Assembly: GCA_964035545.1 (NCBI GenBank)
Contig: OZ037767.1
Location: 22,522,628 to 22,586,627, forward strand
Length of the DNA: 64,000 bases
Source: Bugula neritina
Lineage: Eukaryota; Animalia; Bryozoa
Direction: 5' to 3'
Part shown: in pieces, positions 143 to 20,073 of the stretch
Layout of the letters: every line of letters starts with the position of its first letter
Position numbering within the stretch: the stretch's first letter is position 1
The notes under the pieces: generated by a model
What the model saw: the letters and a program-made list of their open reading frames with translations, nothing else
Databases searched by the model: none
What the model was told of the DNA's origin: nothing
Program-made: the position numbers and the translations under genes

Positions 143-740
143 GGTATACACATAACCAAGGACACCAACTCTGGCATCTGTTACATCCTACCATCCATAG
201 TCTCTGCTGCCGATAGTCAAATACTCAAAAGACACTTCCAAAGTCAGCAGGTCAACGTGACAGCAGAATCTCACCTCACATCTGTGACTGTGCATCCTGG
301 GAAAGTCTCTGATACCAGTTTCATACCGACTGAGGCCAAGTCATTCTGCTTCAATGGCTACCAGTGGGTGACTATTTACCAAGAGACAGCAAGCTCTAGT
401 CATGGTAAGACATTTTTAGTACTGTAATTCCTTTTTATAAAAATCTATTGTTCTTAGTCACTAAATTGTAAATTTATCATGAACATATTTAAACAATTGT
501 TTATTCTTAAACATAGTGAAATATTTTAATATGATCACCCAAGTTACAGTATAAGAAAAATTGTAATACAACGTATACCTATAAGTTTTCTTTTGTGTAA
601 ATGAGAATTTATGTACATTGAACGCTTGTAAAAATTTTATAGATCTTACTTTAAGTTTTCCAATTTTTGTAGAAATCGTGAAAAGAAGAATAAAGTGGCC
701 TAAAATAAAAATCACGATAACAATCACTATCAGGTTTTAA
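143..740 (+). CDS. Last two coding exons (143-404, 673-740) of a BRICHOS-domain propeptide; 5' exons lie upstream of the window
   Basis: AG|143-404|GTAAG reads GIHITKDTNSGICYILP...FIPTEAKSFCFNGYQWVTIYQETASSSH. The KD-x3-4-CY ... C-x3-4-W pattern is typical of BRICHOS. A phase-1 join to ttttgtAG|673 gives EIVKRRIKWPKIKITITITIRF*. Confidence 0.75.
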
Positions 741-811
741 TTCTATCTGTACGGTTCTACCCTTACTTTGCTGTGGGGAAAGCTACTTGGTTGACTGTAA
801 AAACGTAGTTG

Positions 812-960
812 TAGGTGCAGTGATGAAGAAATTGAGAAAAACTATGTGTTATAATAAGTTATAAATTTTGCAAAAAAGACTTTTTTTAGCAAGTTTAAAC
901 AGAACTTATTTAGAAAATTAAAAAAATTAGGCTATCTTAATTTCTCCACTACTGCACCAA
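812..960. mobile_element. Short MITE-like element (TAGGTGCAGT...ACTGCACC ends), same family as 59395-59575
   Basis: Imperfect terminal inverted repeats; terminal sequences similar to the 59.4-kb copy. Confidence 0.45.
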
Positions 961-3263
961 CTGACAAAAGCATTTTTATATTATGCATATATTTTAGCTT
1001 TTATACATGCATCTCAATAAAATTATGTCTTTTTGTAATGTATATTACTAGGTATCTAGTACACTTTTAAATGCTTCATTCTTTCGCAAAATAATAACAA
1101 TAACTATTTTTATGGAACAAAATTGATGTATTATTATCTGTTAATTATTGTTATTAGTTTTTTCAAGTTTTCTATGCCAACATGCCTTTGTTTAATACTT
1201 GCTAACTATAATAAAAAGTCTTCATGTAGAAACAGTTATTATACAACTAGTCATTTAGGAGTGGGAAGTATTGAATAGAAGACAAAAGTGTTCCTACCCA
1301 ATTTTTAACTCATGTTTCATGCACATAGGAAAATTTTATGGCAGTGCTTGAGATTGTAATTGAGTTAACAAGATAATATTCTTTTAATTACTAAAAAGTT
1401 GTACTTTTCTGTTACAATTTCAGATAAATATTTTCATGTCGAGAAACCAAAATCAGTCGTTCACAAATTTATTAAATATATGTAAATACTTTCAGCTATA
1501 AAATTGTGCACCTGTAACCGCTTAATAATAGCAGCTACTGTCTGCATGTGAAAGGTTTCATAAACATAAAAAGTGCTAGAATTTTTGTTAAGCTGCAACG
1601 TTTTTTTCCATAGAAACTGTTTATTCTACTGATTTCTTTTTTAAGAACAACAGCCTAATAATTAAATAAAATACATTGCTGACAAATTTATGTATTACTG
1701 TGAAAGTAAGATGGAAACGTGTTGAATAAGTTGCATAATCTCACAAGTACAAATAAAAAAAGTTAGGCTTTTCTGCCATGAAAGTTTATACTAGGAATTT
1801 TTATAAAATAACCACAACAAGTCTGATGATTTGTAAAATTTTGGATACTTTTTAGGTAAATGGTTAACAAAGCTATAAAAAAATTTCCTAAGAGTCACTT
1901 AATTACTGCAATGTCAAATATATGTATGATTTTTACATTCGTTTAAAAGTTTATTTTGTTTTGTAAATAATTATACGAGCATTTGCTATCACATTATTGC
2001 ACATTTGCAACGTATTTATTTCATTGCTAATATTATAACTAAAATGTTTATATTATATATAATAGCTTAAAAACAAAACACTTGATTAATTTAGCAAATT
2101 TGCTAATATTACAAAAATGTTTACATAATATCACAGCTTTAGCTAATATTTTATTGATTTAGCAGTTTACTTGCAGTTTCTACATTTACAAAACTGCAAA
2201 GTAGGACAAGAAAGCATATAAACACTGCTGTGCCTTTCATTGTGCACCTGGCAAGTATTAACGTCTCAAAAGCAAACTAACTACCTTAGCTGCTGATGTG
2301 ATAGTATGCATACTGATAGGATATGTGATGTGTACTAAGTAGAAAAAAGGGCACTTGGAAATATTTTTAGCAAGTACTTGATGAAGCAATAATCATTTGT
2401 TCTACATGATGAAATGCTGGTACAGATATTATTAATAATTGTAAATCTTAAAATTTCGTGTTTCTTGTTGAACCTAATAAAGTATTTATTATTAAAAAAC
2501 AAGCTGATGGTACATCTTCTGGATAAAAAATGTATGTAATATAAAAATATTGATAATTTTTTACTAGCAAACCACAGAAGAATAAAAACCTTCAAGTATG
2601 ATCTAATTAACATTAAACTGATATTTTGAAATAAACATAATTTAAAAAAAAACAAAATCAATAAAGTGGCTAACAGTTTAAAAATGCTACACAAACTGGT
2701 TTTTAAAAAGAAAACCTTCAAGGTTTTGGTGATGACATTTGTTAATAACATATTTGTATACTCCAATAGAAAATCAGATAGCAATCAGTAGCGTATAACC
2801 ATTTGCTGCTGTGTATAAAGTACAGCTTGTCAGCTGATGTATTACAATATTGTCATTTCATCATAGTTCAATATATTATAAATTTTGTTCAGCATTATAG
2901 GACAGTGACATCTTAACATTATAGTTTATTATTCTAACTTAAGAAAGAACTGTTTAGCTAGAAATTTGGCTATACTTATCAACTGTTTTTTTTAGAACTG
3001 TTACGCTAGGTTCGGGTTTAGCAGTGCCTCGGTTTACCTGAACACCATGGCTTGGTAGGGTTCTAGTAGTATGAGACCCTTGTCTTGCATTAGTATTATA
3101 TCTTGGCTTTGCAGTGGTGTAATACTTCAGTCTGTACCTGAACTTTCCTAAAATTACAAATAGCGACATAATATGTAGAAAACAAATTCATCTTGCTTTA
3201 AGCACAAACAAAGTAGGTAAGAGACTATGTTTATATTTTGAGCAGCATGAAGTTTTTAGTCTC

Positions 3264-3596
3264 TGTTAAAAAATAATTGCCTCCACTGGGAATTGAACCC
3301 GAGTCCTCTGGCTTGCAAGCAAGTGTGCTACCATTACACCACAGAGACTACCTGGTAAACTCAACACTACATCCCACCCAGTTCTCTGAACTCCACTGGC
3401 CTATCTACTACTCCTTCAGTCATCAGGCTTTCCTGGCCTCTCAACTCCCTCGGAGTACTGCAACTACACTTCACTAAAGGCCAAACTAGCTTGAAAAATA
3501 ATTGCCCCCACCGCGAATCGAACCCAAGTCCTCTGGCTTGCAAGCAAGTGTGCTGCCATTACACCACTGGAGCCACTGGGTAAACTCAACTCTACA
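3264..3596 (-). mobile_element. TRIM-like miniature LTR element whose two ~105-108-bp terminal repeats each contain a tRNA-derived sequence
   Basis: Direct repeats 3264-3371 and 3492-3596, each bounded TG...CA, with A-box (TGGTGTAATGG) and B-box (GGTTCRATTC) on the - strand. 120-bp internal region with a purine-rich tract before the second repeat. Absent from the paralogous intron of copy C. Confidence 0.6.
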
Positions 3597-5829
3597 ACTG
3601 TCTAAGGAATTTGATACAGTTGACAGTTTTAAAATGGCTAATAGCAAATCTGAAATAAACACAATTTGTTGTGTTTAACAAAACAAAACAGATTAATTAT
3701 TAGTTTTCACCTGGTGGGTATAGACTAGGTCTTGTAGTAGGACCAGCTGTTGAACCAGTTATTGAACTCCATGTAGCTGTTGTTGGTGGTCCAACTCTAG
3801 CAGTGGGGGGACAGAAAGGTGTTGATGAAGATGGAGTTGATGACTCATGTTTAGGTTTAAAGTCACTGGCTCTGATATGTACTTCTATGGTTCCATATTC
3901 AGACAGGCCCTGCAAGTGATTGGTTAGTATAAACAGAAGTTGTAGATGTTGTGTGACAAACACATATAATGAGAGGTACAATGGGCAGGAGAGTATATAC
4001 ACATAAACTAATAGTATTTCAATATACATTATAAACCAGTAAGTGAGCTATGTGTCATTTTCTTTTTGTTGAGATATTGGAATTGTTGTTGTTAGATTTT
4101 CTTTACATTATTTCCAAGGAGTCATTTTTGTATGTTAGCATGTTTTCAAACCTCAATATAATTATTCTCATTTTTGTTTATTTCGAACATATACATATAG
4201 GCCTATAGTGAATTTTTTTTGTAAGGCCTTTTATGTTCTTTCAGATTTAGCATCTGCCTCGTGATATAACATACTTCTAGTAATTATCAACTGTATAGTG
4301 ACTGGAGACATTGCTGGCCATTACTAACATTTTTGATACGTTTAAAATTTTTTTACACATATGACTGTCTGCCAAACAAGTAAATAAAACAGCTTTTGAA
4401 ATTCATAAGTATAAGTATATAGCTATAACCTCACAGTGTCTATGTATCAAGCAAAGTTGACCATAATGTTACAATAACTATATATATTCAAGTACCCAAA
4501 ACCTTACATTAGTATTGTACAATTATGCACACAGTTTTGTATAAATGCAGAAAGTTGTCTAACACCTTTACTCACCTGAGAAGTAAGCTGAGGTAATAAC
4601 TTGTCAACGTCTAAAGTCAGGGTGGCCACAACTGGGTCCTAGAATTCAAAACAAACTATACAGCACCTTGGTGAAAAAAATTCAGATTGTTTGTAAGCTC
4701 AATAGCAATTAAAAACTTTCTTAAATGACAATTTGGTCAATCTTATACAAAATAAATCAATAGTATAGTTTTTTCTGATAAGATTTGAAACTTTTTATCG
4801 TCATGTATAATAATTTGTGCCAATAGTAAATGAGGATAGAATAAAATTGGGTTGTGTTACTTACACTTTCTGCAATTGTAGAGCTGAAGAATGTTACCAG
4901 ACAGAGAACCAGCTGTATCGAAAGATCCATACTTTAAATATGAAAGCTGATAGTTTTAAGAGATCTGTGCTTTCAATTTTCTTTTGTAATGTGTTACCAG
5001 GTGTGTCTTGCTCGTCAAATGCTATATTTATATCTGCGTTAAATTTGCTTAGAATGTGGTATTATATGTGCTTCAGATCTTTCTACTTCATTTAATAATC
5101 AATCAGCCATGTTAATATCCATATATCTGTCTAAATAAGCTCTTAATATCTAAAAGATGTTCCAGTCAGTTAGATTACACAGAGTATGAAATGTCACAGT
5201 GAAATGTACATTATATGTATATTACATGTATATCATACATAACAGAAATAGTTGTAGATAAGGTTAGATGCCAAATGTTAAAATAGATTTTGGTGTGAAT
5301 GTCCTGGTTATTTATGAAGTACCTAATGATGCTTAATAGAGCCTTCCTCAAAATACTAACTGGAGTGCCAAATTTTTTAAATAAGGCAAAAAGTTGTCAA
5401 ATTTTGTTTAAATACATAATCAAGTTATCAAGCGTAACGCTAGCATATAACAAACATATTTTGGTTTCATAACTTTCCTACAATCATTACATCAGAAGTG
5501 AAGTTATAAAAGCTCATCAGTTATTACACATAAAAGCTCATCTCTATTTTGCTTGTAATGAAATGTTAAATATATAATTTAATTTAATGTCATTGACCTT
5601 CTAATGTCAAAGGAGATGGGCTGATTGTAGCATCAGTGACTTGCAGTAAAGTAATTGAAATTCATAACCCTAATAATATATTATAATCAGCAATATATGA
5701 GCTGTATATAGCACCTGTTTATATAAAGTCATTATTATATTTACTAACTTATTTATCTACTACACAAAACTGTATCTAATAACATTTTTGAGTACTAAAG
5801 AATAGGAACTAAAATGAAGTATGTTTGCA

Positions 5830-5912
5830 AGCGTGTATGTACGTGCGTGCGTGTGCGTGTGCATGTGCGTGCGTGCGTGTGTGTGTGTGTGTGCGCGCGC
5901 GCGTGTGTGTGT
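5830..5912. repeat. (GT/GC)n compound microsatellite
   Basis: Directly visible. Confidence 0.9.
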
Positions 5913-6982
5913 ACACTGTAAATCACAACTAGTAAGAATCTCAGTGACGTGTGCTATTTATTGTGAGATTAGGATAAAGGTACTAGACAGTTCTTGACTT
6001 CTCCTAATCTAACCACATACATAACCTACATTAGTGAAATCTTGAATATATTCCAGGTAAATGATTAACAAAGCTGAATATAATTTTGCAAAAAATTCAC
6101 TTTATTACAATGATCGCTATATGTGTGTTTTTATTTTGTTCTACAATGATAAGAGCGCAGAATATCACATTGATTCACATTTGCAAGCATGCTCATTATT
6201 TTACAATATTATAGTTACTATGTTTATGTTATCTAATAATATAGAAATATGACATTTTATTAATTTAGCAGTTTTGCTAATATTACAGAAGCTTTTATAA
6301 CATAATATTATAACTTTAACTAATGTTATATTGATTTGACAGTTTATTTAAGTTTTCAGAATATACAGAGCTGCAGAGCAGAACCAGTTAGCATATCAAC
6401 ACCGCTGTGCTGTTCATTGTGAGACTAAAACATAGTTACCTGATGATGTACCTGATAAGTATTTGTGTGTTGCTGAACCCAATAAAGTTTTTATTATTAC
6501 GAAACGAGCTGTTGGAATATCTTTTGGATTACAAATGTACGTGATATAAATCAAGGATACTCTCCTTAGTAGCAAAAAACAGGAAAATAAAACCTTCATG
6601 TATGATCAGATTAACATTAAGCTGAAACTTTGAAATAAACGTAATGTAGAAGAACAAAATCAATAAAATGGCAAATAAATAAAAGTTTGAAAAGTACTAT
6701 ACACAAGCTTGTTTTAGAAAAAAAACAATAGTAAAGATGTTGGTGATGACATTTGTTAATAACATCTTTGTATACTCCAATAGAAAATCAGATAGCAATC
6801 AGTAGCGTATAACTATCTGCTGCTGTGTATAAAATATACAGTTTGTCAGCTGATTTATTACAATATTAGTATCTCTTCATAGTTCAATATATTGATCATG
6901 TGACATCAAATATTGGTCATTATGGGGCAGTGATATCATAAAATTATAGTTTATTATTCTAAGAATTCTGTTTAGCTAGATG

Positions 6983-7610
6983 TTAAGGTTTGCTATACTT
7001 ATCAGCTGTATTTTGTAGATCTTCTGGGCTAGCAGCAAGTTTTGCAGTCGGTATGTTTCCTTCAATACCAGGCCTGTCTATTGGTCTTGTAGTAGTATAA
7101 TACTTTTGTCCATACCTGAATTTTCCTAAAGGTACAAATAGTGACACAATATAAAGCAACTTAAATCTTATTTTAAACATGCGCAAAGCAAAATAAAAAA
7201 TTAGCCTCAGCTATATGATATACTATATTACGATGCACTTCTAGTAATTCTCAAAAAATAGTGACTGGATTAAGTTGTCAAATATTATTTACACATATGA
7301 CTGTCTGCCAAGCAAGTAAACAAAACAGCTTTTGAAAAACACAAGTATAAGTACATTGCTATAACCTCACAGCCTCTATATCAAGCAAAATTAACCATAA
7401 TGTTACAATAACTATATATAAAACAACTCTCAATCATGTGAACTTGATGAAATTAAAAATATACAAGTACCCAAAACCTTACAATCATATTGTACAATTA
7501 TGCACACAGTTTTGTGTAAATTATGCAGAAAGTGTTTTCATACTTTTACTCACTTGAGAAGTAAGCTGCGGTAATGTTTAAAGTTAGGGTGGCCACAACT
7601 GGGTCCTACA
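6983..7610 (-). pseudogene. Secreted repeat-protein family, copy B (frameshifted exon 2, exon 3 missing, exon 4 retained)
   Basis: Exon-2 homologue at ~7553-7606 has an internal deletion. Exon 4 reads GKFRYGQKYYTTTRP...DLQNTADKYSKP*. No exon-3 homologue lies between them. Confidence 0.65.
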
Positions 7611-8619
7611 AATCAAAACAAATTACAGTGTGCCTTGTTGAGCAAAATTGCAGTCTTATAGCTTGTAGTTGTCTAAATGCAATGGGAAGTGGTGCCAGTG
7701 TGTCTTGTTCTAGAACATTGACTTTATTAAACTGATAGTCAGCCCAAAGGCGCTGCAAGCCTGGGGAAGTTTGATAATTTGATTGTATATCAAAATAAAA
7801 TTTATCAATTTTTTTATCTTATTGCATCAATCTAGTACTCCGACTTTATAATATTTAGAGGAAGACTGTGTCTGTAATGCACTATCTGGTATTTCATAAA
7901 TAACCTGCGCATTCACCCTGACAACTAATTCAACATTTCACATCTAACCTAATTGTGCTTGTTATGATAGGTCATTACTTATTTTCACACTTCAAATATA
8001 TATTTAAAAAGATTATCCAAAACTAATTATGTTTAATACATGTATATTTCACTGTGAGATTCCATACTCCACATAATCTAACTGACTGAAACATCTATAA
8101 ACTATTAGCAGAAGCTTATTTTGACAGATATGGATATTAACATGACTGATTGGTTTATATAAAGGAAATAGACATATTTAAAGCACCTATAATGCCACAT
8201 TCTAGGCAGATTTAAAGCAGATAGAAATATGGCATTTGATCAGCAAGACTCACCTAGTAGCAGATAGATTTGCAAACACAGACCTCTGTTACAAAACTAT
8301 CAACTCCAACACTAAGTATGGATCTTTCAATACAACTGGTTCTTTGGCTGATGGCATTCTTCGGCTCTACAATTGCAGAAAGTGTGAGTAACACAACCCT
8401 ATTTTATTCTGTTCTCATTTACTACTGACCTAAAATACTATTTATACAGAAAGTTTAAGAATTTCAAATCTTGTCAGAAAAAACTATAATATTGCTTTAT
8501 TTTGCATATATGTGTGGTTGATCAAATTGTCATTTAAGAAGGTATTTAATTGCTATTGAGCTTACAAACAACCTGAATTTTTCTCAGCATGGTATGTTAT
8601 AGTTTGTTTTGAATTCTAG

Positions 8620-10121
8620 GACCCAGTTGTGGCCACCTTGACTTTGGACGTTGACAAGTTATTACCTCAGCTTACTTCTCAGGTGAGTGAAAGTATTTGA
8701 AGACTTTCTGCATTTATACAAAACTGTGTGCATAATTGTACAATACTAATGTAAGGTTTTGGGTATTTTGTATTTTTAATTGACTCAAGGTCACATGACT
8801 TATACTTGTTCTATATTATATAGCTATTGTAATATCATGGTCAACTTTGCTTGATACATAGACACTGTGAGGTTATAGCTATACAGTTATACTTATGTTT
8901 TCAATAGCTGCTTTGCTTACTTGTTTGACAAACAGCTGTTATATATGTGTAACAAATATTTTACAAGCATAATTATGGTCAGCAACTTTATTAAGTAACT
9001 ATGTACTTGATAATTACTAGAAGTACATTGTAATATATATATCACAGCAGATGCTAAATCTTCAAAAACACGTATGCTTTACGCCAAATATTATTTAATA
9101 TGTGATATTTTTTCTATATAAATTACCTGAAAACTATTGTTGTGTTGTATAAATACTCACTATAGATATATGTTCAAAATAAACAAAAATAAAAATATAC
9201 TGCCGTTTGGATGCACACCAATTTAGGAAAACCGCTCCTTGGAAATAGTATTAAAAAATCTAGCAATTTAAAAACTCTAATATCTCAACAAAAAGAATAT
9301 TGTTTGAAGTTTTAGTATTGCATATTGCTCACTTACTGGTTTATAATGTATATTGAAATACTATTAGTTTAAATGTATATACTCTTCTGCTCATCTTACC
9401 TCTCATTAAATGTGTTAGTCACACAACATCTACAACCACAGTTTATACTAACCAATCACTTGCAGGGGCTGTCTGAATATGGAACCATAGAAGTACATAT
9501 CAGAGCCAGTGACTTTAAACCTAAAGAGAAATATCTTCAACATGAGTCATCAACACCACTCTGTCCCCCCACTGCTAGAGCTGGACCACCAACAACAGCT
9601 ACATGGAGTTCAATAACTGCTTCACCAGCTGGTCCTACTACAAGACCTAGTCTATACCCACCAGGTAGTAACTAATAATTATTCACTTTGTTTTGTTAAA
9701 CACAACAAACTGTGTTTATTTCAGACTTATTGCTAACTATTTAAACTGTTTAATATTGTCAAATTGCTTAGAGAGTAACTAAAAAGCTTTATGCTGCTCA
9801 AAATATAAACATAGTCTCTTACTTGCTTTGCTCGTGTTTAAAACAAGATTTGGTTTGTTTTCTATTATGTCACCATTTGTAATTTTAGGAAAATTCAGGT
9901 ACAGACCAAGATATTACACTACTGCAAGGCCAAGATATTACACTACTGCAATGCCAAGGTATTACACTACTACAAGGCCAATAGGTTATAATAGTGTGAG
10001 ATTGAGATACTATACTACAAGCCCAATTAGCAGTGGTATCGAGGCAAACGTGCGAACTGCTAAACCTGCTGTTAGCCGAAAAGATCTACAAAATACAGCT
10101 GATAAGTATAGCAAACCTTAA
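8620..10121 (+). CDS. Secreted repeat-protein family, copy C. Exons 8620-8682, 9466-9664, 9889-10121; Tyr/Arg/Thr-rich RPRYYTT(A/T) repeats; signal-peptide exon not found
   Basis: Canonical GT-AG sites, phases 0/1 and an open frame to ...KDLQNTADKYSKP*. Homology to copy A begins near 7880, downstream of where exon 1 would lie. Confidence 0.6.
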
Positions 10122-11256
10122 CATCTATCTAGACAGCATTTTTGGGAAAATAAACTATAATGCTATGATGTCACTACCCCATAACGCTGACCAATATTTG
10201 ATGTCACGTGATCAATATATTGAATTATGATATGTCAACATTGTAATACACCAGCTGACAAACTGTATGTTATGCACAGCAGCAGATAGTTATGCTTCTG
10301 ATTGCTATCTGATTTTCTATTGGAGTATACAAACATGTTATTAGCAAATGTTATTACCAACGTCTTGAATATTGTTTTTTTTTCAAAAACAAGCTTGTGT
10401 AGTATTTTTCAAACTGTTTTTCATTTGCCATTTCATTAATTTTGGTTTTCTAAATTATGTTTATTTCAAAGTTTCAGCTTAATGTTAATCTGATCATACT
10501 TGTGGTTTTTTTTATCTTTGTTTTATATCACATAAATTTTTAATTCAGAAAATGTTCCAACCAACAGCTCGTTTTTTTTAATAATAAATGCTTTATTGGA
10601 TTCAACAACACACACAAACACACAACATTTCAAGATGCACGGCTATAAATAAAACTTTTTAAGGCATTTCATAATGTGGAAAAACGTCTATTTATGCATC
10701 TTCATTAACTGCTTGCCAAAAAATATCAGAATGATATGCTTATTACTTAGCAGGCATGCATCATATCTGGTCAGTAGGTAGTTTACTTCAGAGAAGTTAA
10801 TACTTATTATCAGGTACACAATAAACAGCACAGCGGTGTTGATAAGCTTACTGGTTCTACTCCACAGCTTTTTAAATTCAGAAATTGCAAATAAACTGTT
10901 AAATCAATAGAATATCAGTAAAAGTTATAATATTATGTTATAAACACTTTTGTAATATTAGCACAACTGCTAAATTACTCAAATGTCATTTTGTTATATT
11001 ATTAGATAACATAAACATTGCAACTGTAATATTAGCAATACAATAAACAGGCTGCAAATGTGAACTGATGTGATATTCTGTGCTTTTATCAATACCTATA
11101 TACAAGGCAAAATCAACTTTTAAGCCTTAAGAATGTAAAAAACACACTTAGTAATCTTTGTAATAAAGTGACATATCTAAGATATTACTAAATATGTGTG
11201 TATGTGGCTTAGATTAGAAGTCAAGACCTGTCAAGTACCTCCATCCTAATCTCACA

Positions 11257-12490
11257 ATTAATAGCACACTGTCACTAATATTTCTGCTGGTTGTGATTTA
11301 CTCTTTGCAAATGGAGAAGATGTAAGCCTTAATAGCTAAATCAGTAGAATATCAGATTTTTAAATTAGTATCCTTACATTCAGTACCAGACGCCATGTCT
11401 TTGTAGCCCTGCATAAACATTTTAGTGCAGGATCTGGAACTTTTGGCTTCTAAAAATTTTACTTGTTTTAAATATGGCATGAACCCCAAATTAAATGTTT
11501 GCATCTAGGGCTTTCTCAGATATGGAATTATAGAGGTACAAATCAAAGCCAGTGACTGTAAATTAAAATGCCCATCTCCAGTGCAGAATCAGTTGTCTGC
11601 CAAGGTTTATTCTGCCACCATCATACCTTCACCATTATCATTCTATTATTCTAGTAGTAACACTGCGTAGATTTTTCTATTTTAATTATTGTTAAGCTCC
11701 AGCTACAAGATCAATACATTGTACTACTGCAAGCTCAACTCTAGCTCCTCCCACTATTCATTGCACTACTACAATACTAAGAGCTCCTACTACAACAAGA
11801 TCAATATATCACACCACTACACGAAAAAAATATCAAACTACTACAAGACCAAGACACCACAATACTACAACACCATAATCCAAGTTACTACAAGATCAAG
11901 ATTTGACACTACTACAATACTAAGGTGCCACACTAATGCAAGCTCAACTCAAGCTTCTCCTCCTATTCCTTATGCTATTACCAGATCAGGAATTCCAGGT
12001 AATACAAGACCATGAAACTACACTACTGCAAGCTTAACTCCAACTCCTTCCTATGTTCCTCGCACTACTACAAGACTAAGATACAACACTGCTACAAGAC
12101 AAAGATACCACACTGGTCAAGACATCAAACTACTACTAGACCAAGACACTGCACTACTAAAAGACCAAGATCCCACACTATTACAAGTCCAAGATACCAT
12201 CATAACCGCAGATCAATACATTATATATAATACTTTGAAACCAGAATATTATACACTGATTAGGACCAAGGTATTAGTTACTATTGTAAGACTAAGACTT
12301 CACACTACTGTAGGACTAATCAAGACAAATACACTTTACCATAGCAAAGCCAAAGCAACAAATTACTGCAAGACATCAAGCTACCACAACATATATTTCT
12401 AATCACAGCATTGACTCTGCTGGCCATGCTTTAAATCGCACAGTTATATAAAAGACAGCTGATGCATATGCTAAGACAGCTACATGTATT
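11257..12490 (+). pseudogene. Secreted repeat-protein family, copy D (decayed; long TTRPRH-type repeat region)
   Basis: Exon-1 homologue has ATT for ATG and a frameshift; exon 2 is absent. Exon 3 at 11509 (GFLRYGIIEVQIKASDCKLK...) is followed by stops and frameshifts. Terminal KTADAYAK resembles NTADKYSK. Confidence 0.6.
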
Positions 12491-13975
12491 TGAAAATTAA
12501 AGTTTTATGTTATATTACCACTGGATCATAATAGTCACATAACTGTTGCTGTATTACATACCCAAGATAATAAAGTATATCTTTATAACACCCTGTCTTA
12601 CAATGTTGAGGGATTTATCATATTATGAGATCAAAATATTAAACTTGTAATAATGTAACTGTCCCATAATGCCCAACATAATGTCATACTGCTTAAATTT
12701 TAGACAATAACTTTAGTTGATATTTTTAATGACTTACTTTGTTTCTTGAGCATCTAGCATCCTTACGGCTTCTTGGGGGGGGGGGGGAAGCGCTGCTTAT
12801 ATAAAATTAGAACAATCCTATTAATTATGAAATATAACACAGTTGATCCCCTAGCAGAAGGAAAGACAGCATAAATTGTCAGTATTAGCAATGAATCCAA
12901 ATATGAGCAGTAGCGAAAACATGGAATCTACCCTTTTTTCACAAAAACAAAACCGGCTATAGATGTATAATAAAACAACAAGCGTCAGTAGCAAAATAAC
13001 TGAAACAATAAAACTTTATAAGCAATGCTACCTTTTTTTCAAGGTGCAACATAATTTCCCAGAGATAACTCAGAACTATTCTGTTTGTTTAGAGCTTATA
13101 GATGAAAAGATTAGTTGATGCAGATTGATGTTTTACGGATGTTTACAATTATATTTCGCTATTACTTAAAAGTTATTTCATATTTATGCCAGAAGAACTT
13201 TTGCAATCTGCAGAGATTTTCAGTTGCTTCTATAAGACAACAATATTTAGTAGAGTAGCTCCAAATTTACAGATTACAGTGTGTAGTGAGTAAAAAGTAT
13301 AAACACTTTTATACTTTTGAAATAAGTTTCTAAAAATATCAATACCAATAATTAAACAGGTATATACTGCAAAATTCCAAGTATTTATAGAAACTTAAAA
13401 CTTGAAAACATTTGAGGTAAAACACATAAATTACTGAGATGTTTTTGCAGTAAGCCCTATTTACATCATCATTCTTACAAGAATTGGCAGTAGACATTAT
13501 TATAAATTACATAATATTAAAAAGCTGTTGCATATATTGTCTCTATAAGATTTTTTGATGAAAGGTATCAACTGCATGTGACAAAACCAAAATCTAAAGC
13601 AGAGCTTGAGGAGTAAAGTTAGGTCTTACTCACGGTGCAAATAATTAGACGAAATGTAGGTCATGGTTCTTCTATGATGGAATACAGAGTTTTTTCAGCT
13701 AGTAACTATATTTCAAAAAAAATTATTCTGGCTATAAATAGGAATACTTGTAACTGTTATTTATTTAACAGCTTACGATAAAGTTTTATTTATAAATATT
13801 AATAATTATAATCCCAAGGAATATCCTAATTTCTTATTGCTTAGTATATAGCAGATTTCATCAGTAGGTGGCTAGATTAGGTGAAGTTAAGACTTGCCAA
13901 ATACGTAACTCGGTTAATAGGTGGTTGAAGTTACAAGGGTTTAGACCAGTCAAGTGATTTTATTATAATATCACA

Positions 13976-16089
13976 ATGAACAGCACAGCAGTGATATTAT
14001 TTCTGGTTGCAATATGCAGCTTTTCAAGGGCAGAAAATGTAAGTCAGTTACTAAACCAATGAAATTAATATTAAGCTGTTATTTTCAGTGAGATTTATCA
14101 ACTATATTTTACACTCATAAAGATAACTATTTCATACTTTTATACTTGTACTATTGAAATTTCTTTTCTATTAGGATGACTGTTTAATTTGTGCTAATAA
14201 AGAAGATTAGGTAAACATTTGTAATCTTCAATCTCAAATCACAGTTCTATTTTTACTTCCAGGACCCGGTTGTAGCAACTTTGAGTTTAGATGTGGACAA
14301 ATTTCTGCCTCAATTTTTCCCAAAGGTGAACCAGCCACTCTGAGTGATACAGACTCAAAAGTAGAGAAATTTATAGATTTAGAAACTTTTTAGGAGTTAC
14401 CTAATTTTTATGCGTTGGTTTAAAATTTGCTCTACATATGCACACAACTGCGTTGTTTCAGCTATACATTTGCCAAACATAAAAGCGCAATAGAATCACT
14501 TCATAGCTAAATGTCATTTACATTTGTAAGGAACATGTGTGTTAAACAGGTTAAACTAAATACGTTTTTATCACAAGATAAAAAATCAAGTTTATGATTT
14601 TAAAATCTGTCATTAATCTGTCGATTAATGTTGTATTATTTAATTGCTACTCACTAAAACTTTGTTCAAGTAAAATCTTTACTTGAAGTGAATCTAAAGT
14701 TATTTTAGAATCTTCTGAAAAATAGCATTACTTAGTTTATCTTTAGAGTAATAGATTGCAAGTCTATTAATTAAGTAACAACATATAATTTCTAGCTTTT
14801 TTTCAGCTAAGTTTCTATTAGATAGTAGCTAGGTCTAATGCGCTTGTGCCTATCTTGCTATATGACTACCTGTTTGTGTAACCCAGCTTACTAGAATTTT
14901 AGCAAAGGCGCAGGCACTTTTGGTTCCTGGAAATTTTGCTCCACTTGAGTATTGGGTAAAACCTATAAAATGAATTTACTTTAATGTTTCGATCTAGGGT
15001 TTTCCTAGTTGTGAAACCTTAGAGGTTAAAATCAGAGCCAGTGACTTTAAATTAAAAAACACGTCTCCTGAGAAACAGGTATCTGCCCAGTTCCATCCTA
15101 CCACCACCAGACCATCACCATCACCATGGGTACCACACCATTTCTCTACCACCACCAGACCTTCACCATTACCATGGGCACCACACCATTTCTCTACCAC
15201 CACCAGACCTTCACCATCACCATGGGTACCACACCATTTCTCCACCACTACCAGACCTTCACCATCACCATGGGTACCACACCATTTCTCTACCACCACC
15301 AGACCTTCACCATCACCATGGGTACCACACCATTTCTCTACCACCACCAAAACTTCATCATCACCATGGGTACCACACCATTTCTCTACCACTTCCAGAC
15401 GTACATCAAGAACTAGAATAAGACCCACCAATGCACCAGCTGTTTCAATGGAGAGAAATAGTCATAGTGAGTAACAGTTGATAGCAAAAATGCAACACTT
15501 TGTGTACATAGTGGTTGCTTTGAACCATTATATTTTGTGAATTGGTGTAGTTTGTGTAAATGGCTTTGAACAACTAATTTTCAATTGCATAAAAACGTGT
15601 TCTCAATTCTGTACAGAACTCTTGTCTTTTAATTATATAAATTATAGAGTCCTAGGCTCATGCTTTTAGCCTCAAAAAGGGCCTGCATTGTTAAATGGTG
15701 GTTTCTGAGATTATATAAACTGCAATAGTAAACTATTTACAATTACATTTCAATGGCACTTGATAAACTAGTTGTGTCGCCATCTTAGTTTATGACTTCA
15801 ACACATGAGACCTACAGACATCAGTTGTTTAGTATATTTTCTCTATTATATCAAGTGTATATATATATGATCTTTGTATCCTATGTAGCTGTACAGTTTC
15901 ACTGGTCTCTAATCATGCGTTATATGCAAGCAGTAAATTTGAGTGCCATTCAAAAACTTTTCTATTTATTCAGGTTCACCACCAGTACCTCAAGGAGCCT
16001 CAGGGTTCAGTGGCAATGTGAACAATCCTCGATTTGGTCCCAGTTTTCAAGTTTTGAAAGATTTAGCAAATAATGCTGCTTCAATATAA
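13976..16089 (+). CDS. Secreted repeat-protein family, copy E. Intact 4-exon gene (13976-14038, 14263-14325, 14998-15466, 15974-16089), ~236 aa, six TTTRPSPSPWVPHHFS repeats
   Basis: Signal peptide MNSTAVILFLVAICSFSRA. Exon 2 DPVVATLSLDVDKFLPQFFPK; exon 3 GFPSCETLEVKIRASDFKLK plus repeats; exon 4 ends LKDLANNAASI*, similar to KDLQNTADKY of the paralogues. All splice phases are consistent. Confidence 0.8.
15100..15390 (+). repeat. Coding 48-bp tandem repeat, 6 copies
   Basis: ATGGG anchors recur at 15126, 15174, 15222, 15270, 15318 and 15366. Confidence 0.95.
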
Positions 16090-16498: not shown

Positions 16499-19400
16499 TT
16501 TTATTTTCATCATAATATAGTGTTTTACAACTAGCATAAGTTACAAGAGCAGACAAACAATTAGAAAGGAAACATAGTAACAAATAACTGTATATAAAAA
16601 TAAAGCTGTCGGAAGTGATGATGGGGCCCAGTGCAAAATAGCATGGCTAGTGGTACGCGGGCCCAAAGTTGGCATAACCATACAAGGCACCACAGATCAC
16701 TCAACATTTGTTTTGGGTTTTGTAGAATGACTCATGATTTTCAGTTTATAATGCTATATAGTTGCTTTTACTTTACAGTGGCAACCAAATTTTAGCTCTA
16801 TAAATTAACAATTTTTTAATTGTTTTTGTTATATACTATATGTATAAGTATTCTATTATAACTACAATATTATAGTAACATATAGCTAGGCCTATCATCA
16901 CGATGCTTGCTCATGGCTAAAGATATATGTAAAAAATAATCATTTGTGCCAGACAAATTCTGTGTCATTTGGAGTAGGAAAAACCAATCTAACTTGATTT
17001 GAATATATAACAAAACTATGTGGGCTTATTATTGCTATCCCAGTAAAAATGGTTTACTTAGAGGACTAAAGACCTTCGCTAATTTCTCAAAGGAGTGATT
17101 AGGGCTGATTGCTTTTTCTAACATAACCACTTGTCTTTGTTATGAAAGTTATAGAAATTAGAGGTTATTTGCATTGCAAATGTACAATAGCTGTAGAGTG
17201 TAGAATTATCATATTTGCATGTGTTTTAGAAATTTATAAGATGTCACTGTAGAGCTGTGTCAACATATTTTCGTCAAGTGATACAAGCATTGCAATTTGT
17301 TGCTATGTATGTCATACTATAATGTGCTAAGCTAAATATCCCAAAATGTGTTCATGAAAATGCTAATTATATGTTGATTTAATTGAATTAATTAATTTTA
17401 TTTTTTCAACTCTTTTAAATTTATTTTATAATAATTTGTGGGGTGTCAATTATTTATAATAAAATTATATAATTCCTCCTAGAAAATTACTCAACTACTT
17501 CTAGTTCACCCTTTTCTTATAGCAGGAGACCCTCAAATGGAAAACTGTGTGCAACAAAAGTTTAGTATTAATGGGTTCCACCCGCTAATTTTTGTATGTT
17601 GGCAATTCCACTAAGCATATGAGTAAACAGACTAAACTACAGCCACAAAGTTCAATCTCTTATGCATTGATAAGTTGCGCTTTCACTAATACACACCATA
17701 GCTTTCTTTGGTCACCTGGTTTATGTCTAAAGTAACAGATATTTACAGTTGCTGATAAAATTTATAGATTTTCTGTGCGGATTTTTATCTGTAGAATCAA
17801 TTATATATAATGTATAACATTTGCTTGAAAAAATTTACAGTCACTATAATGTATTTTCTAAATGCAAGAAGTAGTGCAATCAGTTGTTTTTGATTTATAG
17901 AGATATTAAAATTGTTACCAGAAACGTTTTTTGAAAATAGAGAGTGATAAGTTGTTATATAGTTGATTGAAAAAATGGATAAAATCAATTTAATTGGTGA
18001 GAACTATGTTATAGTTAAAAATCAAAGCACAGAATAATAAGTAATTTTAGATAAAGTTTTGTGACTGAAGGAGAATATAGAGCATTAACATTCATGCAGG
18101 TGACCATGAACTATGAGGATTTAGTTTATGAAAGACAAATACGTGTGAAAGTTGACCAGCAACCTAAAACTTATAATACCATTAATCTATAATTAATAAA
18201 ATAAGCTCATAATCATGCCTTGCTGTGGTATTATAGACATAAATCATATAATCCAACCCATCAACTTTTTTTCCCTTAATACTCATTATGCTGACGTAAT
18301 TAATGTGATTGTTTGAGCTGCTTTGCCTAAGGAAGTACAACCTGGCACAGATTGATGAAACAGTTTTATGCATAAATTAAAAGTATATTCAAACTGGATT
18401 TGCACTGGCATAATATTATTTACATTTAAAACTGTGAAATTTAGCAGAGAAGGAAGTATTATATTACCAGTAGAATAATATACTAAGTTATTTTTCTGTA
18501 GTGTATGCAGACAGAAAGCGAAACCGGAGATTAGAATGATTTTGCTTTACAAATAATATTATTTATGCTGTTAGCAAAGTTTATATGCAGTTTATACATA
18601 TATTCTATTATATTATACACAGTATCAATCAAGTATTATGCTACTGAATTCAGCCTGGAAAGAAAGATTTTCAGACATTCCTGTCTTTGCACTAAACTTA
18701 ACTCTCTGCCGTCTATACATGTAAGAGATATATTGTGTTGTATTTAAAACGCACTTATGATGGAACAAGGCCAATCTAGTGGTAGCTTCATATTAAAAAG
18801 GAAAGCTTTAACTTGCCAACATATATAGAAAAATATTGCACTATAACCAGATTATTGTAATTCTGGTTGATCGTTCAGCATATGGTTTTCCTTTTTCATC
18901 CTATTTCCTAAATTGTGTTTTGACAATTTTATTACAACTTGAGTGCGGCAATAAGCAGAGTATTGATTAAGGATAGTGTTTACACTTATATGTATGACAT
19001 GCAAAGTGGCTATAAAAATTTATCTCATACTTTATTATAAATGCTAGCAAAAAATCTTAAACTATTATCCTTCTTCATATGCTTACATAGTTTTCATGTG
19101 AATCTAGAATTTCTTATTCATTTTCATTATTCAAGCTAGTGAATTAAATTATCATGCTGAAATTTTGACCATTTGACATTGTTATTTTCATAAGAAGCTT
19201 TACCTATAGCAGATAAGTGTTGGAATCCTGAATTATCATAGGTGTTTGAAAATTAAGATATGCTTACTTAATGCTTTTATTATGTTTCTAAAAGCCTCTT
19301 CTAGCTTTTTTTATTATGTCACATAGCTACATCCTGAAAAAAAATATAAGCAAAAAATTTTCATTTAATTCAGTTCTTTCATCTATCCTAAAATGAAAGC

Positions 19401-20073
19401 ACAACGTAGATTCCGAAGCATCAAATCACCAGTGAATCATTAATAAATACGATTAGCTCATAGTAGTATGAATATTTCTCTAGCTTTGTGTTTCTAATCT
19501 CATACTTATCTTAACCTATGTCTGTTTTTGTCAACCAACGCCCAACATATGTAGCACTGATCACCATCACGGTAGAGGTAGCTACAAACTTTTGTGTAAT
19601 CAATTATATTTTCAAACTTACTATGTTGGTCTAAATTACTCTTTTTTGGATGCATTTTACATATCGCAAGCAAAAGATGCTATAATACTTGTTTAACTTT
19701 TAGAATGTGTGAAATTATACATTGTAAGTGTTTTTGCAATGCTTTTGTGTTATTGGCTCTTAAAACTGCGACTTTTGACTCCATAATGTGTGTTTGACAG
19801 TGTGAATAGACCATACATTTTTTCACTATTTTACACTTATTCTATAATAGCTTTTTTTAAATATTGTAAATGTTTTTTGTTTTTCTTGCAGGTTTTGTTT
19901 CTAATTATTGAATTGTAGCTTGCCTATGTATTTAGACATATTTAAAACATAAAAGACATGTAGTATGTAGTATATAACTACTTCCTATTCTCTATTATAT
20001 CAAATGACATAGCAACCAGTATGTTAGTTAAGAAAAATATAGATTGGGTCATATACCAGTGTATACACAAAGT

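What the first reader, a model, noticed from the sequence alone, without database searches (positions are those of the whole stretch)
143..740. BRICHOS precursor releasing a cysteine-free, cationic, strictly alternating peptide RIKWPKIKITITITIRF
Seen: a BRICHOS-like exon splices in frame to a tiny last exon (neither is in the ORF track) encoding V-K-R followed by RIKWPKIKITITITIRF-stop. After the Pro, the peptide alternates polar and hydrophobic residues perfectly (K-I-K-I-T-I-T-I-T-I-R-F); it has five basic residues and no Cys. Established: BRICHOS domains chaperone beta-prone C-terminal peptides released by proprotein convertases (Bri2; polychaete antimicrobial peptides such as arenicin), and those peptides are usually disulfide-bonded hairpins. 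Inference: this is a different cargo class, a linear amphipathic beta-strand likely to self-assemble into functional amyloid or nanofibres and/or to act as a membrane-active antimicrobial.
Basis: partly seen in the sequence, partly recalled or inferred. Interest (0 to 1): 0.85.

Follow-up and report, generated by a model that had tools for sequence, protein, structure and literature searches.

The report
Bryozoan BRICHOS-like precursor, alternating peptide tail
These are the last two exons of an intact moss-animal (Bugula) gene for a membrane-anchored, BRICHOS-like carrier protein that ends in a likely cut site and a short, positively charged, sheet-forming peptide; it resembles the antibiotic-peptide genes of marine worms, but neither its expression nor any activity has been shown.

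Summary
Window 143-404 and 673-740 are the last two exons of an intact five-exon, 209-codon gene. Its first three exons lie just upstream of the window. A near-identical tandem copy sits 6 kb upstream.

The Bugula neritina orthologue in GenBank (P0051) is annotated with the same splice and almost the same tail. The mini-exon is conserved like the coding exons (91-94%, no gaps), whereas its flanks are 71-85% identical. Every paralogue keeps the acceptor, phase 1 and a [E/G/D]-[I/V/L]-[V/A]-K-R motif, followed by a hypervariable, beta-prone tail.

The domain is a divergent BRICHOS. Pfam stays below its threshold, but 10 of 22 family members hit BRICHOS and no other family recurs. Language-model features, Atlas folds, PDB ranks 2 and 6 of 48,161, the Asp/2-Cys motif and the type II architecture all agree.

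No RNA data were available, so splicing, cleavage and function remain inferred.

Cysteine-free BRICHOS cargo and membrane-anchored precursors are already published for a polychaete (PMC10745061). I found no paper on bryozoan BRICHOS precursors or on a single-strand, strictly alternating cargo.

Other loci of this family in the same genome were already noted by this scan.

Verdict: a real gene and a new variant of a known kind. Interest is moderate to high.

The parts
143..404 (+). Exon 4 of 5: the C-terminal two thirds of the BRICHOS-like domain (GIHITKD...SSSH), holding both invariant Cys and the DTSF and NGYQW motifs. It ends in phase 1.
   Evidence: Open frame. 98% identical to the tandem copy and 58% to the C2 paralogue. 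93-95% DNA identity to the B. neritina orthologues. Family alignment invariants.
405..672 (+). Intron 4 (GTAAGA...TTTTGTAG).
   Evidence: Only 73-85% identical to the other copies, with 300-370 gap columns.
673..740 (+). Terminal mini-exon coding part: it completes a Glu codon, then encodes IVKRR + IKWPKIKITITITIRF + TAA (738-740).
   Evidence: 91-94% identity without gaps to three other copies, against 71-85% in the flanks (Fisher p = 5e-5, 0.027 and 5e-4). Same acceptor and phase in all ten copies examined. Used in GenBank models P0051 and P0050.
681..689 (+). K-R-R: the putative proprotein-convertase site. The K-R is conserved at this position in Bugula, Watersipora and the distant paralogues.
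   Evidence: Cleavage itself is inferred.
687..737 (+). Predicted 17-residue peptide RIKWPKIKITITITIRF (monoisotopic mass 2126.35 Da, net charge about +5, no Cys). The strictly alternating core is at 702-737.
   Evidence: In four copies the hydrophobic positions never vary and the changes are K/T/R/N swaps at polar positions. A weak 12-base tandem repeat lies at 705-727.
741..815 (+). 3' flank, probably 3' UTR, with a block (…GGGGAAAGCTACTTGGTTGACTGTAA) that is still alignable in paralogues whose cargo sequence is unrelated.

Best explanation
Window 143-740 holds the last two exons of an intact five-exon gene, one of a tandem pair, in a Bugula-type bryozoan genome. The gene encodes a 209-residue type II membrane protein. 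Its parts, in order, are a short charged N-terminus, one transmembrane helix, a linker, a divergent BRICHOS domain, a dibasic K-R(-R) site, and a 17-residue C-terminal peptide that is cationic, Cys-free and amphipathic as a beta-strand. The likely mechanism is inferred by analogy with Bri2 and with the polychaete BRICHOS peptide precursors. The precursor enters the ER with the BRICHOS domain and the tail in the lumen. The BRICHOS domain keeps the aggregation-prone strand soluble. A furin/PC-type convertase cuts after K-R in the late secretory pathway and frees the peptide. The peptide then acts outside the cell as a membrane-active and/or self-assembling host-defence peptide. What is shown: the gene structure, its conservation, the family, the architecture and the hypervariable cargo. 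What is inferred: transcription, cleavage, chaperoning and activity.
For: Gene model: the five exons have canonical GT/AG sites and the product has the same length and splice pattern as GenBank P0051. Constraint: the mini-exon is 91-94% identical with no gaps, against 71-85% in the flanks. The acceptor, phase 1 and the [EGD][IVL][VA]KR motif are kept in ten copies of two species. BRICHOS: 10 of 22 members hit PF04089, the best at E = 4.6e-4, and no other family is hit by more than 2 members. The orthologue's ectodomain aligns to profile positions 10-85 of 91. By language-model features, all 35 best hits that carry a Pfam family are BRICHOS clusters (score 0.92). The Atlas's own model has TM 0.51-0.56 to cnidarian BRICHOS, OAF and ITM2 clusters, and my model's top two Atlas rows are BRICHOS clusters. 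Bri2 and proSP-C BRICHOS rank 2 and 6 of 48,161 PDB representatives. UniRef names P0050 and P0051 'BRICHOS domain-containing protein'. Two Cys are invariant and there is an [ED]-D-[YFL] Asp motif. Dibasic site: KVKR, REKR and RRKR in Watersipora and a related contig; RVKR, RFRR and RYRR in distant paralogues of this genome. Cargo hypervariability on a conserved carrier, together with tandem duplication, is the pattern seen in polychaete BRICHOS antimicrobial-peptide genes (PMC10745061, PMC5431198). The AF2 model places the tail as an 11-residue strand.
Against: There is no transcript evidence. The only public run that holds this stretch is DNA. The database relatives that are not annotated gene models are unspliced ORF read-throughs. 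Pfam BRICHOS never reaches its 25-bit cut-off, and the window exon alone gives no hit at all. The profile search against PDB sequences found no BRICHOS entry. Foldseek against PDB is not significant, and the VIA Z scores of 4.3-4.8 tie with unrelated folds. The Bugula sites (IVKR, IAKR, VVKR) lack the P4 Arg of the classical furin motif. Sister paralogues carry uncharged poly-Ile/Val tails, so positive charge is not a family trait. Tail pLDDT is only 48-60. AUGUSTUS skipped the mini-exon in one B. neritina copy (P0019), although that copy looks degenerate or chimeric.
Confidence: 0.55

Rival explanations
1. The tail is made but never released. It is a permanent C-terminal strand that pairs with the BRICHOS sheet in cis, as a built-in client or lid, and the K-R is conserved for some other reason. 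The protein would then act as a membrane-bound BRICHOS protein and not as a peptide precursor.
For: AF2 models give the tail as a DSSP strand, which implies pairing with another strand of the same chain. Atlas fold matches to BRICHOS clusters span residues 57-209, tail included. The Bugula sites lack a P4 Arg.
Against: The dibasic motif is kept at one position in every member while everything behind it changes, even in length and charge. That pattern fits a processing site followed by a swappable product. A strand that had to fit one conserved sheet should not be hypervariable. Tail pLDDT is low.
Confidence: 0.17
2. The released peptide is not mainly an antibiotic. It would be a self-assembling, amyloid-like building block (matrix, adhesive or coating material), and the BRICHOS domain would only prevent premature fibril formation.
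For: Twelve residues alternate perfectly, with an all-Ile/Phe face. About half the residues are beta-branched. Paralogue tails are poly-Ile/Val or of mixed charge and so are beta-prone without being cationic. The established role of BRICHOS is anti-amyloid chaperoning (PMC10745061 introduction; PMC9714404).
Against: No expression site is known. A net charge of +5 on a 17-mer opposes assembly at neutral pH without counter-ions. Tandem duplication with hypervariable cargo is more typical of immune effectors than of structural material.
Confidence: 0.15
3. The alternating tail is a weakly constrained low-complexity C-terminus produced by slippage of 6- or 12-base units in an AT-rich genome, and it has no function of its own.
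For: TRF finds a 12-base unit in 1.9 copies at 705-727. The broken C9 copy carries a further repeat expansion, and a B. neritina paralogue has an Ile run. Tails differ in length between copies.
Against: The four orthologous or paralogous copies in two species have no indel in 68 bases. Their hydrophobic positions are invariant and only polar-to-polar swaps occur. Identity is exon-like, unlike the flanks.
Confidence: 0.08
4. The mini-exon is not used in vivo. The real 3' end would be a read-through of exon 4 (…SSSH-GKTFLVL-stop) or another downstream exon, and the model would be a gene-prediction artefact shared with AUGUSTUS.
For: No RNA evidence was obtainable. B. neritina model P0019 uses other 3' exons.
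Against: Acceptor, phase, the K-R motif and an in-frame stop are conserved in ten copies, down to paralogues with 58% exon identity. P0019's foreign C-terminus matches separate neighbouring proteins (P0052-P0057), so that model looks like a fusion. The Watersipora RefSeq models share the same architecture.
Confidence: 0.05

Closest known systems
Polychaete BRICHOS-related antimicrobial peptide precursors (arenicin, alvinellacin, capitellacin, nicomicin; Heteromastus HfBRI-20/-23/-28)
   Same: A signal anchor or signal peptide, then a BRICHOS domain, a dibasic site and a short cationic C-terminal peptide. They form multigene families with a conserved carrier and hypervariable cargo. Some HfBRI precursors are transmembrane, and HfBRI-20/-23/-28 lack Cys; HfBRI-20/-23 are likened to (VR)n peptides (PMC10745061).
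   Different: The phylum is Bryozoa, not Annelida. There is no detectable sequence link to those precursors beyond the weak BRICHOS signal. The cargo is one 12-residue strictly alternating strand behind a Trp-Pro kink, with no turn and no salt-bridge hairpin. The polar face is half Thr. No peptide has been isolated or assayed.
ITM2B/Bri2 (and ITM2 family)
   Same: A type II membrane protein with a linker, a BRICHOS domain and a convertase site, which releases a ~20-residue beta-prone C-terminal peptide (Bri23). An Atlas cluster of ITM2 proteins matches at TM 0.51 over residues 56-208.
   Different: It is not an orthologue, and no significant sequence match was found. Bri23 is a disulfide-closed hairpin of conserved sequence, whereas here the tail is Cys-free and hypervariable between paralogues.
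proSP-C
   Same: A type II membrane protein with a BRICHOS domain that guards a beta-branched, amyloid-prone segment. Surfactant protein C clusters are among the top hits by features and by fold. The poly-Ile/Val tails of sister paralogues recall the poly-Val stretch of SP-C.
   Different: In proSP-C the client is the N-terminal transmembrane helix, not a C-terminal peptide behind a dibasic site.
Designed beta-sheet-forming cationic peptides such as (IRIK)2-NH2, (VR)n and (KIGAKI)3
   Same: An alternating bulky-hydrophobic/cationic pattern, a length of 8-18 residues and no Cys. IRIKIRIK is reported as an antimicrobial beta-sheet former (PMC4330034). The related copies (the broken one on contig 9 and its B. 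neritina counterpart) read R-I-R-I-R-I, almost the designed sequence.
   Different: Those peptides are synthetic and amidated. The natural peptide has a free Phe C-terminus, a Thr ladder and a WP kink. The resemblance says how it might work, not what it does.

Membership tests
BRICHOS domain (PF04089) | Match to the curated family HMM at or above its gathering score (25 bits) | tested here: inconclusive
   The window exon alone gives no hit. The orthologue's ectodomain scores 12.5 bits, E = 0.18, over profile positions 10-85 of 91. 10 of 22 family members hit BRICHOS (best E = 4.6e-4) and no other family is hit by more than 2. The threshold is never reached, but the hits recur and share one register. 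The joined window protein was not scanned.
BRICHOS domain (PF04089) | Conserved Asp near the domain start and two conserved Cys | tested here: met
   Both Cys are invariant in 18 and in 22 aligned sequences. An [ED]-D-[YFL] motif precedes G-[IV]-H in the full-length members, in exon 3 of this gene (FDLEDY) and in the C2 paralogue. Two distant paralogues lack the Asp.
BRICHOS domain (PF04089) | BRICHOS fold (a beta-sheet flanked by two helices, as in proSP-C 2YAD and Bri2 8RNU) | tested here: inconclusive
   The ectodomain model has pLDDT 76.6 and pTM 0.72. 8rnu_A scores Z 4.8 (rank 2) and 2yad_A scores Z 4.4 with 69 of 77 residues aligned (rank 6), out of 48,161 chains, but both tie with LolA and polo-box folds. 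Foldseek against PDB is not significant. The Atlas's top rows are BRICHOS clusters at TM 0.42-0.56. The model is of the B. neritina orthologue, not of the window's own joined protein.
BRICHOS domain (PF04089) | Architecture: N-terminal hydrophobic anchor, linker, BRICHOS domain, C-terminal beta-prone region | tested here: met
   Exons 1-3 upstream of the window encode MDSKDLK, a charged stretch, a ~25-residue hydrophobic helix and a linker. The AF2 model has a helix at 4-45 and the tail as a strand.
BRICHOS-related antimicrobial peptide precursors | A dibasic processing motif between the BRICHOS domain and a C-terminal cationic peptide | tested here: met
   V-K-R-R at 678-689 is followed by a +5 17-mer. 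The K-R is conserved family-wide.
BRICHOS-related antimicrobial peptide precursors | Mature peptide detected, and antimicrobial activity | not testable with these tools
   This needs peptidomics and MIC assays. No paper on bryozoan BRICHOS peptides was found.
BRICHOS-related antimicrobial peptide precursors | Disulfide-stabilised beta-hairpin cargo (the classical arenicin type) | tested here: not met
   The tail has no Cys. This is not a defining feature of the wider group, because HfBRI-20/-23/-28 also lack Cys (PMC10745061).
ITM2/Bri family | Sequence orthology to ITM2A/B/C | tested here: not met
   No significant sequence hit outside bryozoan-type sequences. Only a fold-level resemblance was seen.

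The most novel reading that the evidence does not exclude
Bugula carries a lineage-specific BRICHOS family whose natural clients are minimal single beta-strands: cationic alternating K/T-Ile strands here, poly-Ile/Val or mixed-charge strands in sister genes, and Cys4 peptides in older paralogues. If the strands are released, they would be natural counterparts of designed self-assembling antimicrobial beta-sheet peptides. They might be used to police the surface or the symbiont flora of the colony. They would also offer the simplest natural BRICHOS-client pairs for studying how BRICHOS recognises amyloid-prone strands.
Probability: 0.3. Interest if true: 0.8.

Novelty: new variant of a known kind. 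Interest (0 to 1): 0.55.

Why it matters
BRICHOS domains are studied as anti-amyloid chaperones (Bri2, proSP-C), and in marine worms they are known as carriers of antibiotic peptides. A bryozoan family would extend the system to a new phylum. In it, one conserved carrier is joined through a one-exon cassette to very different beta-prone tails: cationic alternating strands, poly-Ile strands and Cys4 peptides. The family would supply short natural peptides that resemble engineered beta-sheet antimicrobials and hydrogel formers. It would also supply matched chaperone-client pairs with which to test what a BRICHOS domain recognises. Bugula neritina is already a model for symbiont-derived drugs (bryostatins), so host peptides that might shape its microbiota are of practical interest. 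All of this depends on showing that the peptide is actually made.

Tried and rejected
1. Pfam on the window exon alone gave no BRICHOS hit. A Pfam BRICHOS scan of the whole genome exon by exon gave one unrelated weak hit.

2. A PDB sequence search with the exon and with the family profile found no BRICHOS entry.

3. Foldseek against PDB with both models found nothing at E <= 0.001. VIA Z scores of 4.3-4.8 tie with unrelated folds.

4. RNA evidence: the single sequencing-run search returned one run. When laid on the locus, it covers introns and exons alike and shows heterozygous DNA contigs, so it says nothing about splicing.

5. I looked for transcript-derived proteins in the large protein sets. 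The relatives that are not annotated gene models are genomic ORF read-throughs.

6. A profile search for relatives outside bryozoans found only Bugula, Watersipora and unnamed ENA/JGI contigs, so there is no sequence bridge to canonical BRICHOS proteins.

7. The B. neritina model P0019, with a different 80-residue C-terminus, was considered as the true gene structure and rejected. Its tail matches separate neighbouring proteins, and it lacks the first part of the BRICHOS exon.

8. The whole-peptide hydrophobic moment at 180 degrees is only marginal against shuffles (p about 0.09), because the Trp-Pro shifts the register. The alternation is perfect only in the 12-residue core.

9. Rfam found no RNA family in 1-1500.

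10. Steps left out. As the operators required, the joined (spliced) protein of this window was never typed or submitted; exons were searched separately by reference, and the database orthologue P0051 stood in for the full-length protein. No complex prediction was run, because the peptide is shorter than that tool's 30-residue minimum.

Full report
**What is in the sequence**

The window is AT-rich eukaryotic DNA (GC about 0.29-0.39). It lies at G000:C3:22522628-22586627 of a 216-Mb genome.

Frame 1 of 143-404 is open for 87 codons plus one base, and the other two frames are closed. It is bounded by AG (141-142) and GTAAGA (405-410). The acceptor ttttgtag lies at 665-672.

Joining in phase 1 gives Glu, then IVKRR-IKWPKIKITITITIRF and TAA at 738-740.

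**The whole gene**

The 10 kb upstream of the window (locus L009) holds the remaining exons:
- ATG-GAC-AGC-AAA-GAT-CTG-AAG followed by GT, at L009:8609-8629;
- an exon at L009:8844-9023, encoding a charged stretch, a ~25-residue hydrophobic helix and a linker;
- a 99-base exon at L009:9240-9338, ending ...FDLEDYGK.

All junctions are GT/AG and all phases fit. The product has 209 codons.

A second intact copy lies 6 kb upstream (exon 4 at L009:4058-4319). It is 98% identical in exon 4, and its tail is RIKWPKITITIKITIRF.

I never joined the exons into one typed protein. Each was handled by reference.

**Relatives**

An exhaustive HMMER search with the exon found 18 proteins. The named ones come from the bryozoans Bugula neritina and Watersipora subatra.

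A further search found B. neritina P0051 (209 aa; hypothetical protein EB796_003392; UniRef name 'BRICHOS domain-containing protein').

That annotation was made with AUGUSTUS using transcriptome hints (PMC7576161). It is an independent prediction, but it is not proof of expression.

The window's genome is therefore a Bugula close to the sequenced B. neritina. Even the introns align at about 75-90%.

**Is the mini-exon constrained?**

I aligned this gene with its tandem copy and with the two B. neritina copies:

| Region | Identity | Gaps |
|---|---|---|
| Other coding exons | 93-98% | none |
| Mini-exon | 94, 91 and 91% | none |
| Preceding intron | 73-85% | 300-370 gap columns |
| Next 160 bases | 71-76% | present |

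Fisher tests of the mini-exon against its flanks give p = 5e-5, 0.027 and 5e-4.

Within the four tails the Ile/Phe positions never change. All replacements in the alternating core are K/T/R/N swaps at polar positions.

**Paralogues**

Ten copies were examined: this pair, a broken copy on contig 9, a copy on contig 2, and six in B. neritina. All keep the acceptor (t)ttgtag or ttttag, phase 1 and the motif [E/G/D]-[I/V/L]-[V/A]-K-R. Behind that motif they diverge completely. The tails fall into these groups:
- Cationic, alternating K/T-Ile or R-Ile strands.
- Tails ending in an uncharged poly-Ile/Val stretch. VAVQEPKTDVVIIIIVT is used in GenBank model P0050.
- Mixed-charge strands: KADVTIEIKLIIKK, and a second alternative mini-exon in the contig-2 gene.

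More distant paralogues also have a dibasic site at this point:
- Contig 6: RTRFRR or RTRYRR followed by other tails, one of them an alternating F/R stretch.
- The contig-2 cluster at 12.25 Mb: RVKR followed by a four-Cys peptide.
- Watersipora: KVKR or REKR followed by 45-55-residue peptides rich in Cys and aromatic residues.

A 3' flank block remains alignable between subfamilies whose cargo is unrelated. The picture is a conserved carrier, a conserved cut site and a swappable, fast-evolving cargo.

**Is the carrier a BRICHOS domain?**

No family member reaches Pfam's 25 bits. Several lines nevertheless point the same way:
- 10 of 22 members hit PF04089 (best E = 4.6e-4), nearly full length and in one register. 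No other family is hit by more than two members.
- By language-model features, the best 35 hits that carry a family are BRICHOS clusters (score 0.92, 209 shared features). The Atlas's own model matches cnidarian BRICHOS, OAF and ITM2 clusters at TM 0.51-0.56 over about 146 residues.
- My first model's top two Atlas rows are BRICHOS clusters.
- With the better ectodomain model (pLDDT 76.6, pTM 0.72), Bri2 BRICHOS ranks 2 (Z 4.8) and proSP-C BRICHOS ranks 6 (Z 4.4, 69 of 77 residues) among 48,161 PDB representatives. These Z values are low and tie with unrelated folds.
- The two Cys are invariant, and the Asp motif sits where BRICHOS domains have theirs.
- The type II anchor-linker-domain-tail architecture is that of Bri2 and proSP-C.

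On the other side, Foldseek against PDB and the profile search of PDB sequences gave nothing significant.

I read this as a divergent BRICHOS domain, with a probability of about 0.85. Both models are of the B. neritina orthologue, which is 91% identical to the window's exon 4 in the alignments.

**What could not be shown**

- No RNA run holds the locus. The one run found is genomic DNA. The 404/673 junction, the alternative AG at 732-733 and read-through therefore remain untested by transcripts.
- Cleavage, chaperoning, assembly and activity are all inferences.
- The Bugula sites lack the P4 Arg of the classical furin motif.

**Mechanism proposed**

The precursor inserts as a type II protein. 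The lumenal BRICHOS domain shields the strand; in the low-confidence models the tail is a DSSP strand, so it is paired with another strand of the chain. A convertase cuts after K-R and frees a 17-mer of 2126.35 Da and charge about +5.

One face of the strand is all Ile/Phe and the other is K-K-T-T-T-R. The register shifts at the Trp-Pro.

Designed peptides of this kind, such as IRIKIRIK and (VR)n, are antimicrobial beta-sheet formers (PMC4330034; PMC10745061). The uncharged poly-Ile tails of sister genes show that the common denominator of the family's cargo is beta-propensity. Self-assembly is therefore a live alternative, and so is a non-released cis strand.

**Novelty**

BRICHOS peptide precursors are known from polychaetes. 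Cys-free cargo and transmembrane precursors were reported in 2023 (PMC10745061), so the 'different cargo class' claim is only partly new.

I found no paper that links BRICHOS precursors with bryozoans, and none with 'cysteine-free' BRICHOS antimicrobials under that wording.

The orthologue is in GenBank only as a hypothetical protein. Other loci of this family in the same genome were already noted by this scan, and their notes agree with what I saw.

I class the finding as a new variant of a known kind.

Noticed in passing
window 779-1046 (core 811-958): A high-copy dispersed repeat lies just 3' of the gene. More than 30 genomic copies match at 71-76% identity. Contig depth in the DNA run is about 19,000-20,000, against about 150 nearby. 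It is probably a SINE/MITE-like element.
   Followed up: partly
window 2954-16089: Several ORFs carry modular repeats (e.g. RPRYYTTA units at 9828-10121, and a 16-residue unit repeated six times at 15126-15416). Copies of one 100-109-aa ORF lie on opposite strands at 3700-4029 and 9373-9675. This matches another first-reader note on a cluster of secreted repeat proteins.
   Followed up: no
L012:8001-14406 and L013:1-1800 (B. neritina GCA_010799875.2): GenBank models P0019 and P0049 look like fusions of a BRICHOS-family gene with a neighbouring, unrelated gene family (the 'DVNLTKEKPS...' proteins P0052-P0057). P0019 also skips the first part of the BRICHOS exon and the mini-exon that is present at about L012:9875-9975.
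   Followed up: partly
L014:6306-6395 and L014:6540-6623 (G000:C2:29416305-29416622): The contig-2 paralogue has two consecutive candidate terminal mini-exons that encode similar mixed-charge alternating tails (…KRKADVTIEIKLIIKK and …KRKADVSIEIKIVVKF). Its intron in front of the BRICHOS exon holds a ~500-base tandem repeat that reads as an open frame (L014:5233-5751).
   Followed up: partly
L011 (G000:C9:7900531-7900789, minus strand): The contig-9 copy is broken in the BRICHOS exon: it matches in two pieces and has a TGA. Its mini-exon carries an expanded R-V-D repeat behind an R-I-R-I-R-I strand. Its B. neritina counterpart (L012 copy 2) has the shorter tail.
   Followed up: partly
L016:4482-4775 and L017 (minus strand, G000:C2:12255258-12255407): Distant paralogues of the same family: a contig-6 gene with RTRFRR followed by an alternating F/R strand, and a gene of the contig-2 cluster at 12.25 Mb with RVKR followed by a four-Cys aromatic peptide.
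   Followed up: partly
L009:5153-5300 (between the two tandem copies): A long (TA)n-type microsatellite, open in three frames as YIYI..., lies between gene copy A and gene copy B. Similar runs occur elsewhere in the flanks.
   Followed up: no
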